From Vitrella brassicaformis CCMP3155 (Eukaryota; Protista; Chromerida), in the NCBI GenBank assembly GCA_001179505.1, contig CDMY01000214.1:101961-165960 (forward strand): DNA of 64,000 nucleotides, written 5' to 3'. Each line of letters begins with the position of its first letter. Positions within the stretch are counted from its first letter, which is position 1. Below the pieces are notes generated by a model. The model searched no databases, was not told the DNA's origin, and worked only from the letters and a program-made list of their open reading frames with translations. Below are positions 7,019 to 25,697 of this stretch, in pieces. Position numbers and translations under genes: made by a program.

Positions 7019-10000
7019 TCACTTGCGCGGCGGGGGGAACGGGACAAACGCCTGGCGGGTGACGGAGCCGACGCCCACGGGTGCACGGGGCATGATGGTC
7101 ATGCCGGCCGGGCTGCCGGGGGGCCAGGGCATCGAGGGTGCCTGCATGGGTGGGCTGCCGGGTGGCCAGGGTGCCGGGGCGACTGGATGCATGTTGAAAC
7201 GGTGGGCAGCAGGGAACCGCGCCGGTGCGGGTGGAACGTAGCTGAAGCCGCCGAAGAAACCCCCTACTGATGGACACATATATCATGACATCACACATGC
7301 CTGGGTGTAATGTGTCTTACTGCTTACCATTGGTCTGCGCCATAGGGTGTTGGATGACCGGAGGGCTGGGTGCCGCCACCTGCCAGCCGCCCGTCTTGGT
7401 GGCGACCTGCGGCTTGGGCAGCGTAACCAAACGCGGCGCGTTGGTGGCGACCTGCGGCTGGGGCGGCGTAGCCAAAGGCGGCGCGTGGCTGGGCGGGGCG
7501 TTGGCCGGGGCCACCGGCAGTACCTGAGTGAGCCACATAGAGGGATGGCAGAGGGGTGTGTGTGTGGGGGGGTGTTGCGACCGACCTTCTTGTCGTCTCC
7601 TGCCGTCTCGGCCGACTCAGGAACCTGCTTAAGACACACAAGAGAGTGGAAAGGAACCACAGAGAGCCAGAGAGGTGGATTGTGCGTGCCGTGTGCGGGG
7701 TGGTGTGGGCTTCGAAGGCATCACCTGCGCAGTCTTGTCCTTCTTGTCCTGCTGCTGCTGCTGCTGCTGGTGCTGGTGCTGGCGGTGAAGGAGTACGACG
7801 GTCTGCATGCAAAAATAATACATACATGACGCACACCACCAGTGTGTAATCACACAAGCTTGTGTGCGTGCGTATGCAGGGAGGGAGGGGGGCAGGGAGG
7901 TGCGTGCCTGGGTGAGGGTGTCGACTTTGGTGGCGAGTTGCTCGATTGTGGCGCTCATCGCCTTGTTCGACTCCACAAGCTCCTGCAGGAGTCAGTGGAC
8001 AAGAGAGAGGGAACCGAACACATTGCCGCTGTGTGTGCGTGTACGTATGTGTGAATGTGTGTTTTGGTGGGTGCTCCGTAGGTGCGTCATGCTGACCCAC
8101 CTTCTTGTCGTCAACCCCCTCCGCCACGGTATCAGCAACCTGAATACCACGGCGGAGTTGTGCGCCGTGTCCTGGTGTGTGTGTGTGTGTGTGTGGCATG
8201 CTGACTGCATCGAGTTTTTTGCTGATCGTCTCGAGCCCGCCGCACAGCGTGAGGTTGTCCTCGCGCAGCTCCTGAATGAAGGCACAGCGTCTTCGAATGA
8301 GTGTATGTGTGCTGTGGTTGAGCTTACCTTCACCTCGTTCAGGGTCTTGAAGACCAGACTGTGCAGGAACTGAGTGTGTCATGACACCAATACACGTAAG
8401 ACCCAGACAGATGGACTGGACGTGTATGTCACTACCTCGAGCTGCGTGTAGAAGTCCGAGGCCGCCGGCAGGTCTTCGTCGAGCTCGGTCGTGCTCTGCA
8501 TCTGTTTCAATGGCCACCGAACAGACACAGAAAATGGGCACATGCACATACCCACCATTAAGCTATGTAAGTACCTCGAAGATCCTCTGCTGTGAGGGCT
8601 GCATTGGCAGAGATACATCCATGCATCCAGCTGCCAGTGGGTGTATGTGCATGTGACTTACGAAGACCATCAGGTGCATTGACTGCAGCAGGGACGTCGA
8701 CTGCGACTGATTCGACAAGCGAACAGACACAACGAGATTCCATATCCGTTTTGCCATCGATCGCAATTTCCGCCGTGTATACGCACCTGAAACACTGGCT
8801 GCGAGATGAGAGGCCAGGTGGATAAACAGACACCATGACAGTGGGTGCGTGGACGTCGCAGCCGAGACATACACACACACACACACACACACACAACAAA
8901 GCAATGCAATGCAATGCAGGAGGGAGGGAGGGACTGAGTACGTACTGAGTGGTCCGCAGGTTCAGCAGCGGCAGCAGCAGCTGAGTCGACGCCATGGCTA
9001 ATCTGGTTTGACGCATGGACGGGCGGCAGGAACCGGCGGAGACAGGGTGTCTGTGGGCAGATGCCTGGCTGGCTGTCTGTCGATGTGTCTGTGCTCACCT
9101 TGGCCTTGTTGTCGTCATTCGCCGGCTCAGGCGTACACTGAAGGAGTGGTTATCAGTTAATGGACACACAGACACAGAGATGCATACATGCATTAATGTG
9201 TCAGGCACGCCAGGCCACCTACCTTGTCGCTGTCGCCGCTTGCTGCTGCCGCCGCAGCTGCAGCTGGGCATGTCTCGTCGGCGTCGGCAACCTGACAGGC
9301 AGCAACCACAACGGACGACAGACAGACACCATGGAAGAGCAACAGACAAGTGCTGCACATCTGCCTGCCTGTCTGTCTGTATGTCCGCCCAGTATGCACA
9401 TAGATAGATACTTGAGGTCACACACGCCGCCACCCAACCTACCTACCTACCTACCTCCTTGCTGTCGTCTTCTTGGCCGGCAGTGGCAGCAGCAGCAGCA
9501 GCCGCGGGCGATGAGGGCGTGTCCGGGTGGGCCTTGTGCTGCTCGTTCTTCTTCTTCTTCTTCTTCTTCTTCTTGTGGCGCCCCTGAACCACCAAACGAG
9601 AGAGAGAGGGAGGGAGGGAGGGAGGGTTGTGTGGAACGAAATGAATCAATGCTCAAGAGATATTCTTCCACTGACTGACTGACTGACTCACTGACTGACT
9701 GACTCACTGACTGACTGACCTTCTTGCCGCTGCCGCCATCGCCCTCACCGTCCCCCTGAGCAGACGACTGACGCAAACACACAGAAGATCGATACATATG
9801 GCACCCATCCATCCATCAGATCAGCGTGCAGCCGTCCGTGTGCTCACTCACCGGCTCCTGCTGTGCTGCTGGCGAAGAAGCGCCTCGTGGGCCTCGACCT
9901 GAGTGTGGCCATCATGGTGTATGTATATCCGTGTGTGTATCTGTGTGTGTATCTGTGTGTGTACCTAATCGGTGCCTTTGTGTGGGAGGGGCTGAGAGAA

Positions 10001-12014
10001 ACGTACAAGCGGTTCATACGGCTCGTGTCCGTGTTAGCCCTTCTTCTCACTTGTGTGTTCTTTGTGACGTAGGCACCGACTGCAAGCACGGCGTCCTGGG
10101 TGCCCGACACGAAGAACTTGACAATGTCCCCATGCACCTGCTTGCCCCAGACGTGGACTCTGCAAACGATGACAAGGAAACGACATGTGGATGTCTCCTC
10201 TCCTTCCTGGTCTTGTGTCCATCTGTCTGCCAAATCACTCACTGAAAGGGGCCGAAGTCCAGCTTGTCGAACTCAGCGAAGCTTACCTCCATCTTCATCA
10301 TCGCCCTGCCGTAGTTATCCCAGTCTCTGGGGATCTGCATAAGCCAGCACGGACATCCGTTCTGTGCGCTCCTCCCCGCCCCCCTCACACACTTGTACAC
10401 TGGCCGTCCGCTGGTGTGTGGGTGTCGGCTGGAGGACCTGCATTACACCCACACACACACACACACACTCCCACACATGCAGCTGCCGCAGTGTGCGTGT
10501 CAGTGTGGATGGGTGTCCTGACCTCCACTGCTTGAAGGTTCTCGAGGCGCATCTGGCCCGACTTGCTCTCGGCCTTCTTGAGCCTGCGTCAGGAACAAAC
10601 ACACACACACAGAGGGGCGTGTGTGAGCGGCACATGTGTGTGTGCGTGTGTGGTGTGTGTGTGTGGCGGACTCACCGCTGAATGATGTTGTCTACTCGAT
10701 CAGCGTTGAAAGTGTGGGTCTCCACGAGCCAGGACTTGAGCTCCTCGTAGTGCGGGCCCGCCCACTTGAACTCCAACTCGCCACCCTCAGCAACCTGCAT
10801 AACACACACACACACACAGGTGACCGTGTGTGTGGCTGAGCTGCAGGCCAGGCGTATGTACTTGGGGATCCTTGAACATGTTTCTGGCCTCCTCGAAGGG
10901 GAAGTTGTCCGGCAGCACGAACTTGTCGCCCTTCTCCTTGATCATGTGCTGGATGATGTTCTCGATGGAGTGGTGCTGCTGCACCAGCTTGTGGGCCGTG
11001 ACGGGCCCGATGCCCTTGATGGAGTCGCAGTAGTCGCAGCCGCACAGGATGCAGAAGTCGATGAACTCGTCCATGGTCAGCTTCAGGTCCTCCAACACCG
11101 TCTCGAGCGTCAACACGTGCACCTTGTTGCCGGGGTCCTCCTGCTCCGAGAAATTCAGGTGCCGAATCACCGTCGGCGACCTGCACTCGACCAACACAGC
11201 ACACGCACACACACACATAATCCCCCCTCCCTCCTCCCTCCCTCCCTCCTCCCTCTGTGTGTGTGTGGCCATCTCAAACACCCATCCAGCCCACCCGAAT
11301 GTGAGTGCGCTAGCGTCGTCAGTGGCGGTGGCGTAGACCTTGCCCTTGGCCGCGAGTTTGGCGCACTGTGCCTCGGCCTCGCACGGCGCCTCTACGACGG
11401 GTATGCCCAGGAGCTTGAGCAGGTGTTTGACTTCGTCGTTGTGCTGCTTGGTGATCTTGACGGTGCGGCCGATGAACTTCTTGACCTCCTTGTCGCCCGC
11501 CTCCTTGGCGGCCTCGAGGTCCTCCTCGGCCTTGGTCCGCTTGTCCGAACGCATCAGCAGCTCGCCGCTCTTCAGGCGGGGGGGCGCGCCGTCAAACACG
11601 TACACGGGCGTGATGCCAGCCTCTGACACACACACAGACACACACACACGCACACACACAGAGAGAGAGAGAGAGGGATGCACAGCGCACACCCCAACAC
11701 ACTCAGATGATTGAGATGCCGTGGCGTGTGCCAGTGTGGGTGTTTTGCGGGTCTTTACCGAGGAGCTTGACGACTCTGTCGAGCATGCCCGTGATGTACG
11801 AGGTAGTCTCTCCGCTCTCGTTGGTGAGGTTGGCGGACGAGAAGTTGGGGTCGTTGCCGCTGCTGCCGTCGCGGACGGCTATCATGAGCTGGTACAGCGA
11901 CATGGATGCGTCGATGGCTAGCTTCTGACCCATCAGAAAGTCGTACTTCTCGTGGTCCTTCAGGCTGCGGGGCGCCTGGTCGCTGATGAACTTGATCAGC
12001 CCCTTGATCCCCAT
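7019..12014 (-). CDS. FEN1: FEN1/XPG-family 5' flap nuclease-like protein (catalytic Asp replaced by Ser, PIP box degenerate), apparently fused to a long non-FEN1 C-terminal region (~20 further small exons)
   Basis: FEN1 exons are 12014-11759, 11622-11295, 11180-10862, 10794-10676 and 10583-~10523. They contain [49 protein letters not shown] and [16 protein letters not shown]. The chain continues through mostly phase-0 exons: IPRDWDNYG.., [11 protein letters not shown].., [16 protein letters not shown], ..[16 protein letters not shown].., and a Pro-rich exon at 7019-7270. One junction near 9850-9900 is ambiguous. The FEN1 identity is high confidence; the fusion is moderate. Confidence 0.8.
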
Positions 12015-12198
12015 CGCTCGCGAGGGATGGCTGGCTGGCTGGCTGGATGGATGGAGGCGCAAGGCAATATGCGATCTGCTGCGGCGGCCACAGCGGACTC
12101 CAACCGAGCACCCTGTCTGGGGGCAAGGGTGTCGTCTGCCTCTTGGGAGGGAGGAAGAGTCTAAGATGGAGAAGTGAACCAAACAAAACGATTAACCG

Positions 12199-13520
12199 AT
12201 GCTTGAGAACCGATGCTTGAGAGGACGCGCCAGAGCTCGTCCAGCCTCAGCAGCAGCGGTTTCACGGAGCACCCTAGGCGGCGTACACCTCCCTTTGGAT
12301 CCCCCTTTCCGCGTAGTGGCTGGCCAGTACGAGCGAAGTGGACCGCAAAATGCGCTTCCCCCACTACTGTCGGCTTCTCGTGAGTTTGGGGGTGGTCAGG
12401 CACGTGTCAACGACGCCTGCTACACTTGTTCTACGTCACTGACTCATCCATCGTGTTGTGCTCGCAGGTGAGCCGACGAGTGAAGTTGAGTTATGTGCTG
12501 CACCTATTGCACTGGGCTCGGTGGCACCGCAACGGCATGTACCGTCGTTCCGTGCCAGCGTGCCCAGTCAACGATCTCGAGAAGCTGCATTTTGCAGTGC
12601 AGAAAAGACGGGATAATCTGTGGGTTCTGGAACGTCACGTCGTAGTACGAAACGGTCAGTGAGTGCAGGCGGCTCAGCAGCTGCTCAGTGAGCCAAGACA
12701 TGCAAGAATTGATGGCGAGATGCACCATGGATTTTCTCGCCCCACATCCATTCCCATGGAAGAGGACACAGCTTTCCGAGAGAGCATCGTCAACCACTGG
12801 AGCCAGCTCCTGTCCGTCGAGCTGATGAAGCACAACGCGTTCCAAGTGGCGAGTCGCGCGCAGCGCGCGGCGGCCGCTAGAGGGCCACGGACGTTGTCCA
12901 TTGTTTCTCCATGTATTGTTTCCCTTCGCTTGCTTGATACGAACTCATGCATCTGCTAAATCCACCTGGCGAGATGCATCCGTGCCGCTGGCCAAGCCTT
13001 TCTGTTGCCATGGGGGGCTGAAGGTTGGAGTGGATCAGAGTGTGTGTGGATGGATGTCACCATGGGCTGAGCCATTTATGTATATGGAACAATCGAGACT
13101 TCAGAATTGCTCTGCTTGCTCTGGACGATTGAAGAGACTTGCAATGGCGGACAGCCTCGAATTGGTCAAGCCATTGCAATGCACGAGTTGAATAAAATGT
13201 ACGCAGCCTCTGCTTTGTCGGGTCAGTGACTCTCTTCCTTTGTCTCTCCCTGTGTGTATGTGTGTGTTTATGTGTCTGTGTGCGTGTGGGAAGAGAGGAT
13301 GTGGGGCGATGTATCTCTGAGGTTCAATTGGTGTTCGCCCAGAATGGCTGAGAATGCGTTCAACAGGCCGTGGTGAGACATAACGATGACATCTCGGCAA
13401 GCAGGCTGCAGAGGGTGGTTCACTAGGCCGTCAGCAAGCTCGACTACAAGACAGTGCAGGACCTGCTGCTCGACCTGACAGATCAAACAGACGAAGGCAT
13501 CGATAACGACGAATACGATA
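12199..13520 (+). pseudogene. Probable pseudogene of an unrecognised protein, divergent from FEN1
   Basis: Protein-like, microsatellite-free exon blocks are broken by in-frame stops. ORFs 12426..12662 and 12663..12959 are contiguous across one TGA. A later exon reads VQLVFAQNG*ECVQQAVVRHNDD..VVH*AVSKLDYKTVQDLLLDLTD. Confidence 0.45.
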
Positions 13521-20399: not shown

Positions 20400-22455
20400 C
20401 ACCGTGCAATGACAAAGACAGGGCTGTCCCTTCATTTCCACTGACGTCGGGATATGAAATGTAGCAAGCGATATAACACTCCTGGTGGGCAACACCTGAC
20501 GCCACGCCAAAGAGCAAGGGAACGAACGCATGTGTGTGTGTCCACGTGTGTGTGTGTGTGACCCGACTGCACCACGTCTCACCGCCTGGCGTTGCAGCGG
20601 CGATGTCGTGGATGAGTTGGTGGAGCTTGGCGGTCTTGGCCTCGGCCCCCAAGTCAGCGTCCTTGATGGCGTCTGCCGCACGCCGGTATAGGAGCTGCAT
20701 ACCCTCATGCCTTGATTGCCGTACTGGGATCGTGATGGTACCGTCCGCCGAAAGTGAAGCACTGGCGGGGCAGACAGAGAGAGAGACTCACACACAACCG
20801 GTGAGATGGTGGCTGGGTCTTGTGTTGTCTCGATCGTCGATCAGTGACTTGACTTACTTGCCCTCTTGGCTGATGTCGAAGCCCGGCCACTCGTGGGCGC
20901 CGAACGTCAATATCTTGCTGACGCGCATCTTGGGCTGACAAACATACACAGACAGACCACGCAGACACAGACAGAAAGAAAGAATGGAACACACAAGCCG
21001 CCCGTCCGTCTGTCGCCGCCTTGCCTCCATGCGTGTGTGTGTATGTGTATCCCTCCCGCCACACCGCCGCCCACTTACGTCGTTGAAGGCGTCGTTATTG
21101 TTGATGTTGCTGGTGATGGTGTCGGCTGGAGGCGTCTCGCCCTCCTCCTGGTCGACAACGCTCGCCTGACGGGCATGTAGACGCATGCAGAAATGACATA
21201 TGCACATATATGCATGAGTCTAGTGCTCTTATGCGCAGTTCACCGTCTTGTGATTCTTCTTGCGATTCTTCTTGTTGTGCTTCTTCTTCTTGTTGCTCTA
21301 CAGAGAAAGACAAGACACACACATGGACAAGGAGACAAGGAACCCATCCACACAGAGAAGGCCAAGACTCACTCACCTTCTGTTGCTTGGCCACACCACC
21401 GTCACCGTCGGCCCCGCCCTCATCACCGTCACCGTCCTGAATGACAAACATACACCAGCAGGTGCATAGATGGAGACACAGTCGAAATGCACACATTTCT
21501 CCATGACCTACTTGGTCGGTGCCATTGCAATGTAAGCGGGGCTGAGAGAAACGTACAAGCGGTTCATATGGCTCGTGTCCGTGTTAATCCTTCTCCTTAC
21601 TTGTGTGTTCTTGGTGACGTACTCGCCGACTGCAAGCACGGCGTCCTGGGTGCCCGACACGAAGAACTTGACGACGTCCCCACGCACCTGCTTGCCCCAG
21701 ACGCGCACTCTGCAAACGATGAGAAGGAAACGACATGTGGATGTCTCCTCTCCTTCCTGGTCTTGTGTCCATCTGTCTGCCAAATCACTGACTGGAAGGG
21801 GGCGAAGTCCAGCTTGTTGAACTCAGCGAAGGTTACCTCCATCTTCAGCATGACCTTGCCGTAGTTATCCCAGTCTCTGGGGATCTGCATAAGCCAGCAC
21901 GGACATCCGTTCTGTGCGCTCCTCCTTTCCCTCCCCCGCCCCCCTCACACACTTGTACACTGGCCGTCCGCTGGTGTGTGGGTGTCGGCTGGTGGACCTG
22001 CATTACCCCCCCCCCCCCCCCCCCNNNNNNNNNNNNNNNNNNNNNNNNNNNNNNNNNNNNNNNNNNNNNNNNNNNNNNNNNNNNNNNNNNNNNNNNNNNN
22101 NNNNNNNNNNNNNNNNNNNNNNNNNNNNNNNNNNNNNNNNNNNNNNNNNNNNNNNNNNNNNNNNNNNNNNNNNNNNNNNNNNNNNNNNNNNNNNNNNNNN
22201 NNNNNNNNNNNNNNNNNNNNNNNNNNNNNNNNNNNNNNNNNNNNNNNNNNNNNNNNNNNNNNNNNNNNNNNNNNNNNNNNNNNNNNNNNNNNNNNNNNNN
22301 NNNNNNNNNNNNNNNNNNNNNNNNCCCCCCCCCCCCCCCCCACACACACACACTCCCACACATGCAGCTGACGCAGTGTGCGTGTCAGTGTGGATGGGTG
22401 TCCTGACCTCCACTGCTTGAAGGTTCTCGAGGCGCATCTGGCCCGAGAAATACAA
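20400..22455 (-). CDS. Paralog of the FEN1-chimera tail without the nuclease domain ([20 protein letters not shown] domain, Lys-rich exon, IACYISYPD module); gene or pseudogene
   Basis: 21507-22446 is highly similar to 9963-10566, with homology ending abruptly at cgggccagatg. Exons read [30 protein letters not shown]|[36 protein letters not shown]|DGDGDEGGADGD..|SNKKKKHNKKNRKKNHKT|..PKMRVSKILTFGAHEWPGFDISQEG|..QLLYRRAADAIKDADLGAEAK. Confidence 0.6.
22025..22324. other. Assembly gap (300 N) between poly-C tracts
   Basis: Run of N; the paralogous intron at ~10445-10470 has only ~20 bp at this position. Confidence 0.99.
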
Positions 22456-23539: not shown

Positions 23540-23753
23540 CTGATGCCTGCAGGCGAAAAGAAAAAATTAAACGTCTCGTCTCGCGCGATTTCTCGCCAAG
23601 GAGGTCCAGGGTCCAATTCCTTCTCGATAGGATGAATAAACACCGGCAGCCTCTATCCTACCCTGCACTCGGTCAAGTTAGCCCCCTCGCCCCCCAGTCT
23701 CGGAGAAGCTCGCTTTCTCTCCCCTTTTTCGCGCACAAGGGTCACATCGCTAC

Positions 23754-25697
23754 TCATACAGTATCGACAGCTCTGCACAATTCTCTATCCATGACATCCA
23801 GGAACCTCTCCGCCTCGCCCCTCTCAATCAGGGGCGCGCTCGTCTGGAGGCACACGCACAGCCGGCCGCCCACCGTCACGCACGAGAGCTGAAACAAACA
23901 GCCGTTCTGGCTGTTGGTCACGCCGTAATACACGCCATCCAGACTAATGGGGCCGTACTGCGTCCTCCCCGGCCACACTCCCGCGTTGGACAGACCACAC
24001 GTGTAGGCACGACCTAAAGGCATACGAACACACACACGCATTGAGTCCCAGATTGATCATCGAATGTCGACTGCCACCCGCTAACTCACCATGGGTCTGC
24101 TCCGATGCAGCGGCCTTTTCGACAACGTCCTCAATCTCCGCCACCCGCATGCCCACGTCGAACAGCAGCGGCCCCTCACGCCCACTCACATCAATCACCG
24201 ACCGGAACTCCTCCCGGCAGCCTTTGGCAAACCGCCAGAAGGCCTCATGTGACCCAGCCAGTGCCGGCGGGACTCGCAGGTTGAATTCCACAGAGCCGCC
24301 GAGAGATGAGAGTGTGCAGGGGCGGGGCAGCGGCGAATTCACGGCGAACCGACGCAGGTCGGTTGACAAAAGGAACCGTACCAAAGGGTTGCTCATTCCT
24401 GAGACGTCTTGACACGCCATAAGGGCGGCTGCGATGAGTGCTGCCGTCACCGTGGTGCCCTCCCGCCGGCTCCTGTGCTTCAACTTCTCCATCAGTGGTC
24501 GGCCGAGCGTCCTCAAACAGAGCTGAGTGTGCCGCTGCGACGGCGTCAATCCCTCGCCCCTCCGTCGGTCGAGCACCAGCATCACGGGACACACGATGGT
24601 GGCCGTAGCCCTCACGAGGTGCTTGACGGTCTGCCAGGAGAACACCCGCCTCACATAGTCGACAAACGGCTCCTCGATGGACGTGTTGCCGAAGAGCAAT
24701 GCCTCCACACTCGGGGGGAAGGAGACGGAGAGAGGGGCCGGATTGTCCGCGTGGTGTTTCGATGAGTGTGGCTGAATGTCGTCAAGGAGGTCCTCCAGGA
24801 CGATGTGAGCCGAGATCTGGTCGGAGATGGCGTGGTTGAACAGCCACACGAGAGCTGACCGGCCGGCAGAGGGGCTGTGGACAACATGCAGCAGCCACAA
24901 TGGGGCGTCACGGGGAAACGTCACACCTGCACCCATACAGAAAGACACGGCCATGTTCCCTCGCATTCGTTTCCCTCCCCGGTCTCTCTTACCGTCGATC
25001 GTTCCCTCGACAAGCGTCCGCCACTCATTCCTCAGCTCGGCACTATTTCTCGCCTCGACATCCACCCACACCACCGCCCTGTCCACCAGCTCATCAGCAG
25101 AGGCATCCAGCGGATAAAACCACGGCCACTCGACACTCTGCGGCCTCGGGCAGCACTCATCCCCCACAGGCAGGTCCCCTATCTGCACGCGTAGCAACGG
25201 ATGCCGCAACACGACTCCCTCCAACGCACGACGGACGTCATCACGTGTGAGCGACGATGTCCCCGTGAGTTCGGCGACCGAGAAATGGGCGATTGAGAGG
25301 GGGGCATCTCTCTCGTTGCGCTGGGTCTTGGTGAGGAGTCGCTCCCAGCTGCCGAGAGGGCGGGTGTAGGTGGGGATGGGTGCGGCTGTGACGGGTGCGG
25401 GTGGCTGCTCCACTGCAGGCAGCTGCCTGTCCGCTGCTGCCGAGGGAAGGGGTGTGATCTGCATCGTTAACAGATAACGCATTCATCCATGGGCTGTGCG
25501 GTGAGTCAGAGAGAGAGAGAGCTGTATGTGCGTGCGTGTGGGCACTGCCGTCCGTCACTCACCTGTCTGCGTTCGGGTGTTGATGCGACGCGGTGACGAT
25601 TGGGCTGCCATGGCTTCAGGAATGAGCCTCGAGTGTCCAGATCTGCACCGGTCGCACCGAGTGTGAGTGCCAGCTGCCACCATAGCTGACATTTCAT
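23754..25697 (-). CDS. Condensation-fold CoA-dependent acyltransferase (alcohol acetyltransferase/PapA5-like) with an N-terminal signal/transit-like presequence; 3 exons (25697-25563, 25458-24090, 24013-23754)
   Basis: Motifs: RPLGSWE, ALEGVVLRHPLLRVQI, WLFNHAISDQIS (HxxxDG-like) and GLSNAG. Both introns are GT-AG and phase-consistent. Exon 1 reads MKCQLWWQLALTLGATGADLDTRGSFLKPW. Confidence 0.85.

What the first reader, a model, noticed from the sequence alone, without database searches (positions are those of the whole stretch)
7019..12014. FEN1 pseudo-nuclease chimera: catalytic Asp lost, PIP box broken, long foreign tail
Seen: the motif that is ATED[MA]DxLTFG in FEN1s reads [11 protein letters not shown]. 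The D181-equivalent codon is AGC (Ser, 11309-11311), two substitutions from GAC, so a single base-call error is unlikely. The PCNA-binding box QxxLxxFF reads QMRLENLQ. The reading frame stays open through many phase-0 exons encoding a compact unknown domain ([22 protein letters not shown]), a K9 tract, a coiled coil and a Pro-rich tail. Known: human FEN1 D181A binds flaps but does not cut, and the PIP aromatics are needed for PCNA binding. Inference: a neofunctionalised paralog that binds flaps or branched DNA without cutting and is uncoupled from PCNA.
Basis: partly seen in the sequence, partly recalled or inferred. Interest (0 to 1): 0.7.

Follow-up and report, generated by a model that had tools for sequence, protein, structure and literature searches.

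The report
Chimeric, probably dead FEN1 paralog
In the alga Vitrella brassicaformis, a partial copy of the DNA-repair nuclease gene FEN1 has lost one catalytic aspartate and its PCNA-docking motif, is fused to a lineage-specific gene and is transcribed as that fusion, but whether the product does anything is not shown.

Summary
The gene lies on the minus strand at window 12014-7019. It starts with a FEN1-like nuclease module in which the residue aligned to human Asp181 is Ser (AGC, 11311-11309). Its PIP box reads QMRLENLQ.

The genome is Vitrella brassicaformis CCMP3155. An intact FEN1 (443 aa, Asp and QMRLENFF present) lies on another contig. The window gene is a DNA-level partial duplicate of it, introns included. 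Homology runs from 95 nt upstream of the ATG and stops exactly after the Asn codon of the PIP box. The broken PIP box is therefore a duplication breakpoint.

Downstream, the copy is joined through a short linker to a small orphan alpha/beta domain and a long low-complexity tail. The domain has two copies in this genome and no relatives among 1.84 billion protein representatives. A 1993-nt public transcript contig and Logan RNA contigs match the fused exon chain exactly.

That transcript carries a 27-nt exon with an in-frame TAG, giving 451 aa. The public annotation (CEL94301.1, 878 aa, auto-named "Flap endonuclease 1") stays in frame only through an alternative donor.

The FEN1 module evolves about 13 times faster than its parent, and neutrality is not rejected. 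Its changes still tend to avoid conserved sites. I read it as a young, expressed chimeric gene whose function is unproven.

The scan noted this same stretch before (s1-205651).

The parts
10538..12109 (-). Segment duplicated from the canonical FEN1 locus (G000:C708:224157-225779). It covers 95 nt of 5' leader, exons E1-E4, the first 46 nt of E5 and four introns.
   Evidence: blastn gives 87% identity over 1652 columns. Exons are 94.8% and introns 86.4% identical. These are the only two copies in the genome.
11759..12014 (-). Exon E1 with the ATG at 12014-12012. It encodes the XPG_N start, and Asp34 and Tyr40 (human numbering) are kept.
   Evidence: Pfam XPG_N, E=1.7e-11. Alignment to human FEN1. 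RNA contigs with 0 mismatches: X1 record 5 and X7 record 23.
11295..11622 (-). Exon E2. Asp86, Lys93, Arg100, Glu158, Glu160 and Asp179 (human numbering) are kept.
   Evidence: Alignment to human FEN1 residues 78-185.
11309..11311 (-). Ser codon AGC at the position of human FEN1 Asp181. The parent has GAC.
10862..11180 (-). Exon E3, covering the end of XPG_I and the helix-hairpin-helix region. Asp233 is kept.
   Evidence: Exact match to transcript L024 from 10984 downward.
10676..10794 (-). Exon E4.
   Evidence: Exact match in L024 and in X7 record 21.
10523..10583 (-). Exon E5. It holds the PIP remnant QMRLENLQ at 10555-10532 and the duplication breakpoint between 10538 and 10537.
10393..10437 (-). 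45-nt exon E6 ([15 protein letters not shown]). It acts as a linker and is predicted to be disordered.
   Evidence: L024. pLDDT is 40-54.
10243..10334 (-). Exon E7, the first half of the orphan domain. The locus-2 paralog protein starts at the Met inside the corresponding exon.
10051..10159 (-). Exon E8, the second half of the orphan domain. The public annotation uses an alternative GT donor after 10077.
9965..9991 (-). 27-nt exon with an in-frame TAG at 9967-9965 when it follows the full E8. This gives a 451-aa product.
   Evidence: L024 and P0121
9852..9898 (-). 47-nt exon, the only tail exon upstream of the 196-nt Pro-rich exon (7523-7328) whose length is not a multiple of 3.
7019..9767 (-). 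Seventeen tail exons: an acidic/Gly stretch, the K9 tract, Ala runs, a coiled-coil-like part, a Gln run and a Pro-rich end. The stop TGA is at 7021-7019. There is one GC-AG intron (7907-7803) and a 12-nt micro-exon (8798-8787).
   Evidence: Exact match to L024. Splice joints in X1, X2 and X7. The 412-codon frame stayed open in 0 of 5000 shuffles, and GC3 is 0.79. Intron table.
21516..22446 (-). Locus 2, a partial copy of the chimera from 24 nt inside the FEN1-derived part to 82 nt past E8. It is interrupted by an assembly gap and is annotated as a 149-aa protein (P0122, CEL94305.1).

Best explanation
This is a young, lineage-specific chimeric gene of Vitrella brassicaformis.

Origin. A DNA-level partial duplication copied FEN1 from its 5' leader to the middle of its PIP box, introns included. 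The copy was placed upstream of an orphan gene. Transcription now starts in the FEN1-derived part. Splicing joins FEN1 residues 1-356 through a roughly 30-residue linker to the orphan gene's small alpha/beta domain. The linker is probably former 5'-UTR. In some splice forms the join continues into a roughly 420-residue low-complexity tail.

State of the FEN1 module. It keeps six of the seven active-site carboxylates and the gateway Lys93 and Arg100. It has Ser in place of the metal-binding Asp181. It has also lost three other invariant residues (human Phe42, His63, Lys80). It has no PIP aromatic residues and no FEN1 C-terminal tail.

Inferred consequences. The module probably still folds and can bind flap or branched DNA. 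By analogy with human D181A, it should cut orders of magnitude more slowly. PCNA cannot recruit it through a PIP box.

Selection. Constraint is strongly relaxed but perhaps not gone. The product is either a newly made non-cutting DNA-binding module on a new scaffold or a fusion on its way to decay.

What is shown: the origin, the anatomy, transcription and the fused splicing. What is inferred: folding, DNA binding, loss of cleavage and any cellular role.
For: - Parent gene and breakpoints.
- Organism and parent protein P0001.
- Sister relationship 100/100, with branch lengths 0.10 against 0.0078.
- Residue mapping to human FEN1.
- Asp is invariant in 114 of 114 scorable homologues.
- Of 31 amino-acid differences, 23 are derived in the chimera and 7 in the parent (p=0.005).
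- Changes avoid conserved sites, 6 of 159 against 25 of 196 (p=0.004).
- Both exon indels are in frame.
- Fused transcript: L024 matches 21 consecutive exons from E3 with no mismatch, and BLAST covers the remaining exons at 100% identity as far as 7328. X7 record 21 and X1 record 4 agree.
- Public model P0125 equals the window exon chain.
- The tail frame looks coding.
- The orphan domain folds with pLDDT 81-89.
- Human D181A is 10^4 times slower but still binds at low nanomolar: PMC4825025.
Against: - Pairwise dN/dS is 0.43. With the asymmetry, the chimera lineage comes to about 0.7-0.8, and neutrality is not rejected (p=0.24).
- An open frame would survive neutral drift in 25-41% of simulations. 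The intact ORF is therefore weak evidence.
- The only full-length transcript contig ends the FEN1 frame at a TAG, with more than 15 exon junctions downstream. That is what an unproductive mRNA would look like.
- The annotated in-frame form cuts the last helix of the orphan domain.
- No RNA contig was shown over the Ser codon.
- There are no protein-level data.
Confidence: 0.6

Rival explanations
1. It is a transcribed but functionless by-product. The partial FEN1 copy is a decaying gene fragment that happens to drive read-through transcripts into the neighbouring orphan gene. Most of these transcripts carry a premature stop and are degraded.
For: - The chimera branch is about 13 times longer than the parent's.
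- Lineage dN/dS is near 0.7-0.8 and is not distinguishable from 1.
- Four invariant residues are lost.
- L024 has an in-frame TAG followed by many exon junctions.
- Keeping the ORF open by chance is not unlikely.
Against: - Substitutions avoid conserved positions.
- Exon indels are multiples of three, and all splice sites are intact.
- The tail frame of 412 codons is open and has coding periodicity.
- Two independent assemblies show clean splicing.
Confidence: 0.3
2. It is still an active, PCNA-independent 5' nuclease. Ser at position 181 and the six remaining carboxylates could support catalysis with one metal ion. From my own knowledge, some bacterial FEN-family enzymes that lack part of the second metal site do this.
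For: Six of seven carboxylates, Lys93, Arg100 and Tyr40 are kept.
Against: - Human D181A loses 10^4-fold in rate.
- Asp is invariant in 114 of 114 eukaryotic FEN1 homologues scored.
- Further invariant residues are lost.
Confidence: 0.08
3. It is an assembly artefact or an allelic variant of FEN1, not a separate chimeric locus.
For: Locus 2 nearby contains an assembly gap and mosaic identity.
Against: - Intron divergence from the parent is 13.6%, with many indels.
- The junction is bridged with no mismatch by a JGI transcript contig and by Logan contigs from other runs.
- Three runs from two studies hold about 0.9 of the sampled words of the stretch.
Confidence: 0.02

Closest known systems
Canonical FEN1 of the same organism (CEM31007.1 / A0A0G4GLJ3, P0001, contig C708)
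   Same: About 90.5% amino-acid identity over 357 residues (359 alignment columns). The exon-intron structure is the same. Both have XPG_N, XPG_I and the helix-hairpin-helix region.
   Different: The parent has Asp at position 181, the PIP box QMRLENFF and the Lys-rich C-terminal tail. The chimera has Ser and is cut after QMRLEN. Downstream it carries foreign exons.
Human FEN1 D181A, an engineered mutant (PDB 5zoe; kinetics in PMC4825025)
   Same: Loss of the same metal-binding carboxylate in an otherwise intact active site.
   Different: That mutant was made in the laboratory. It has Ala rather than Ser, and it keeps the PIP box in the full-length protein. The chimera also has changes at Phe42, His63 and Lys80.
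Young chimeric genes made by partial duplication (from my own knowledge, Drosophila Sdic and jingwei are textbook cases)
   Same: An intact parent gene remains elsewhere, the breakpoint lies inside the coding region, the fusion to neighbouring exons is transcribed, and evolution after the fusion is fast.
   Different: Here the donor is an essential replication nuclease and the recipient is an orphan gene. This resemblance comes from memory and was not tested.
Non-catalytic XPG/FEN-fold proteins such as yeast and trypanosome MKT1 (from my own knowledge)
   Same: An XPG_N/XPG_I fold reused without a complete nuclease site.
   Different: MKT1 is old, conserved and acts in mRNA regulation. No sequence relationship beyond the shared fold was tested here.

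Membership tests
FEN1 (XPG/Rad2 5'-nuclease superfamily) | XPG_N and XPG_I domains | tested here: met
   P0125 scores PF00752 at 78 bits and PF00867 at 100 bits, both above the cut-offs.
FEN1 (XPG/Rad2 5'-nuclease superfamily) | Seven active-site carboxylates (human D34, D86, E158, E160, D179, D181, D233) | tested here: not met
   Six are present and position 181 is Ser. Asp is found in 114 of 114 scorable homologues.
FEN1 (XPG/Rad2 5'-nuclease superfamily) | C-terminal PIP box QxxLxxFF followed by a basic tail | tested here: not met
   The sequence reads QMRLENLQ. Homology to the parent ends after the Asn codon. A PIP-like motif is present in 113 of 120 homologues.
FEN1 (XPG/Rad2 5'-nuclease superfamily) | Descent from FEN1 (clade membership) | tested here: met
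   It is sister to Vitrella FEN1 with 100/100 support, inside the alveolate FEN1 group that includes Chromera.
FEN1 (XPG/Rad2 5'-nuclease superfamily) | Structure-specific flap cleavage | not testable with these tools
   This needs an enzyme assay.
Pseudo-enzyme (a retained dead paralog) | Catalytic residue lost while the fold is kept under purifying selection | tested here: inconclusive
   The loss is shown. Lineage dN/dS is about 0.7-0.8 and neutrality is not rejected. Changes do avoid conserved sites, p=0.004.
Chimeric gene from partial segmental duplication | Intact parent elsewhere, introns copied, breakpoint inside the gene | tested here: met
Chimeric gene from partial segmental duplication | Fused, spliced transcript | tested here: met
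   L024 matches exons E3 to the tail exactly. X7 record 21 agrees.
Chimeric gene from partial segmental duplication | One continuous reading frame across the fusion into the whole tail | tested here: inconclusive
   The frame runs continuously into the orphan domain in every form. It reaches the tail only with the alternative donor at 10077 (annotation) or by skipping two exons. The observed contig stops at 451 aa.

The most novel reading that the evidence does not exclude
The FEN1 module has been kept by selection as a non-cutting reader of flaps or branched DNA. It is freed from PCNA and tethered to an orphan alpha/beta domain and a Lys-rich, coiled-coil and Pro-rich scaffold. That would make it a naturally evolved equivalent of the D181A trapping mutant, with a new role in chromerid DNA metabolism. 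The 27-nt TAG exon would then act as a splice switch between a short form and a long form.
Probability: 0.2. Interest if true: 0.65.

Novelty: new variant of a known kind. Interest (0 to 1): 0.42.

Why it matters
If the product is functional, it would be a natural FEN1-derived protein that binds DNA structures without cutting them. That would be useful for understanding how essential nucleases are turned into readers. It would also be a clean, datable case of gene birth by exon shuffling in a free-living relative of apicomplexan parasites. If it is not functional, it is a caution for annotation. The public record names this 878-aa protein "Flap endonuclease 1", although it lacks a catalytic Asp and the PIP box, and the real FEN1 lies elsewhere.

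Tried and rejected
- Pfam on every tail exon and on P0125 and P0122 found nothing beyond the FEN1 domains.
- An exhaustive HMMER search with exon E8 against 1.84 billion representatives found only the two Vitrella proteins and two weak hits to repetitive bacterial proteins (E=1e-5 and 8e-4). I take those as spurious.
- A word search with the 434-aa tail frame found no hit among proteins of 239-760 aa.
- The ESM Atlas feature search gave no usable hit.
- Fold searches of the orphan-domain model gave no Foldseek match at E<=0.001. The best VIA Z was 7.1 (permuted BMC shell, KH and EF-G domain-like beta-alpha-beta-beta-alpha sandwiches). The tool's own note puts that at background level, so I assign no fold family.
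- I looked for homology between the regions upstream of the chimera and of locus 2, and between their downstream parts. There was none, so a simple tandem duplication of a whole gene is rejected.
- I looked for a transposon at the breakpoint. A dispersed repeat lies 630 nt upstream, but it has no Pfam or Rfam match and no link to the breakpoint.
- Two exact-pattern scans of JGI metagenome contigs for chimera-specific E2 and E3 words found nothing. The collection may withhold near-identical records, so this says little.
- Assembly artefact and allele were rejected (see the rival explanations).
- No exon model joined by me was sent to any search tool. Searches were run exon by exon by reference, or with the database proteins P0121 and P0125. 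Exons were joined only inside local scripts, to count substitutions and to check frames.
Full report
**What is there**

The gene lies on the minus strand. Reading the sequence gives an ATG at 12014 and five nuclease exons:
- E1 12014-11759
- E2 11622-11295
- E3 11180-10862
- E4 10794-10676
- E5 10583-10523

All five have GT-AG introns. Pfam finds XPG_N and XPG_I in the exon translations. The motif reads [11 protein letters not shown], with AGC at 11311-11309. In a phmmer alignment to human FEN1 chains this Ser falls on residue 181. The best hit happens to be the D181A crystal form 5zoe.

Alignments of E1 and E3 to human FEN1 show that D34, Y40, D86, K93, R100, E158, E160, D179 and D233 are kept. 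Among 120 FEN1 homologues, all 114 that could be scored have Asp at this position, and 113 have a PIP-like motif. The PIP remnant QMRLENLQ lies at 10555-10532.

**Where it comes from**

The assembly has 72.7 Mb in 1064 contigs. The best protein hit is "Flap endonuclease 1" of Vitrella brassicaformis CCMP3155 (P0001, 443 aa), encoded on contig C708. That gene has GAC (Asp) at the 181-equivalent position, QMRLENFF, and a Lys-rich tail.

Window 12109-10538 aligns to C708:224157-225779 at 87% identity, introns included. Exons are 94.8% identical and introns 86.4%. There are two exon indels, both of 3 nt. Homology starts 95 nt upstream of the ATG and ends right after GAGAAC, the Glu-Asn codons of the PIP box. 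The PIP box is therefore cut by a duplication breakpoint. It was not mutated or frameshifted. No third copy exists in the genome.

In a maximum-likelihood tree the two Vitrella proteins are sisters (100/100), next to Chromera FEN1.

**How the FEN1 module has evolved**

- Nei-Gojobori gives dS 0.099, dN 0.043 and a ratio of 0.43 for the pair.
- Of 31 amino-acid differences, 23 are derived in the chimera and 7 in the parent, judged against 21 outgroups (binomial p=0.005).
- The tree branch lengths are 0.10 for the chimera and 0.0078 for the parent.
- Chimera-specific changes hit four positions that are invariant or nearly so: F43L, H73Y, K90T and D189S in its own numbering, which are human F42, H63, K80 and D181.
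- If synonymous changes are split evenly, the chimera lineage has dN/dS of about 0.7. Neutrality is not rejected (p=0.24). An open frame would survive neutral drift in 25-41% of simulations.
- On the other side, changes are 3-4 times rarer at conserved positions than at variable ones (6/159 against 25/196, p=0.004).

Constraint is therefore strongly relaxed but probably not absent.

**The tail and its origin**

After the breakpoint the sequence is unrelated to FEN1. Three small exons follow:
- E6 10437-10393
- E7 10334-10243
- E8 10159-10051

Window 10561-9969 has a second copy at window 22446-22333 and 22010-21516. This copy, which I call locus 2, contains an assembly gap. It begins 24 nt inside the FEN1-derived sequence, so it was most likely copied from the chimera. 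It is annotated as a 149-aa protein (P0122, CEL94305.1) that starts at a Met inside the exon corresponding to E7.

AlphaFold agrees. The first 20 residues of the model are disordered. Model residues 21-82 form a beta-alpha-beta-beta-alpha unit with pLDDT 81-89.

The domain has only these two copies in the genome. It has only these two representatives among 1.84 billion proteins. It has no Pfam match and no fold match above background. The rest of the tail has no relatives either. Its 412-codon frame stayed open in none of 5000 shuffles and shows coding-like GC3.

**Transcription**

No run is on record as RNA, but three of the four runs laid gave spliced contigs:
- X7 record 21 (706 nt, no mismatch) joins E3, E4, E5, E6, E7 and E8 and runs 160 nt further.
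- X1 record 4 joins E8, E7 and upstream exons.
- E1 is covered without mismatch by X1 record 5 and X7 record 23.
- Many tail introns appear as CT..AC joints.
- Contigs of the parent's mRNA were also laid. They are recognised by their many mismatches and a 3-nt insertion.

A public 1993-nt transcript contig (L024, JGI 3300017297) matches the window exon chain exactly from E3 into the tail, including a 12-nt micro-exon and a GC-AG intron. The fusion is real at the RNA level.

No contig was shown across the Ser codon. The only hint is a second contig carrying the window's letters at 11536-11537 in run X7.

**Splice forms**

Three forms have to be considered.
- **Observed form, 451 aa.** L024 contains two extra exons after E8. 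One is a 27-nt exon (9991-9965) ending in an in-frame TAG. The other is a 47-nt exon (9898-9852). In this form the FEN1 frame ends after PLPHKGTD, and the tail lies in another frame whose first ATG is far downstream.
- **Annotated form, 878 aa.** The public model CEL94301.1 / A0A0G4EFM4 (P0125, auto-named "Flap endonuclease 1") reaches the tail by using a GT donor after 10077 inside E8. It omits the micro-exon. My exon chain reproduces it exactly. This form removes half of the last helix of the orphan domain. The alternative donor is absent from locus 2. X1 record 4 ends exactly at 10077, which is weak evidence for a branch point there.
- **Hypothetical form, 866 aa.** Splicing E8 straight to 9767 is what the locus-2 model does, and it gives a clean 866-aa frame. 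I saw no transcript for it.

**Reading**

Origin, anatomy and fused transcription are shown. Function is inferred. By analogy with human D181A, which is 10^4 times slower in single turnover but still binds and bends DNA at low nanomolar concentration (PMC4825025), the module should bind but hardly cut. Without the PIP aromatic residues it cannot use the usual PCNA dock. Whether it is retained for that purpose or is drifting cannot be decided here.

No paper in the searched library mentions Vitrella brassicaformis together with flap endonuclease.

**Limits**

- Read laying and the look-up of sequencing runs were limited to one call each, so isoform shares and read-level support for AGC could not be measured.
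- No exon model joined by me was sent to a search tool. Joined sequences were used only in local scripts or through the database proteins P0121 and P0125.
- The earlier scan note s1-205651 describes the same stretch. Its phrase "PIP box frameshifted" is corrected here to a duplication breakpoint.

Noticed in passing
window 21516-22446 (minus), gap 22024-22324: A second partial copy of the chimera junction plus the orphan domain, annotated as a 149-aa protein (CEL94305.1). It carries 24 nt of FEN1-derived sequence. Identity to the chimera is about 99% in the first 220 nt and about 92% after that. Both ends are non-homologous, and a 301-N gap flanked by poly-G sits inside.
   Followed up: partly
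window 12736-12950: A dispersed repeat of about 156-215 nt with more than 40 copies across the genome (82-99% identity), 630 nt upstream of the duplication breakpoint. It has no Pfam or Rfam match.
   Followed up: partly
window 7803-7907 and 8787-8798: A GC-AG intron and a 12-nt micro-exon (PVFQ). Both are confirmed by transcript L024. The micro-exon is missing from the public gene model.
   Followed up: yes
G000 contigs C336:405533-405847, C382:49470-49607, C227:406391-406624, C366:442676-442771: Four further XPG_I-type loci in the genome, presumably the other XPG/EXO1/GEN1-type nucleases. The C336 gene has a long Pro-rich insertion between its N and I regions.
   Followed up: no
window 10075-10077 versus 21625-21627: The alternative donor that the annotation uses inside E8 (G|GTGCC) is specific to the chimera. 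Locus 2 reads GGCGAG at that place.
   Followed up: partly
window 23750-24600 (minus): An unrelated gene ends about 1.3 kb upstream of locus 2. Its last coding exons are visible but were not analysed.
   Followed up: no
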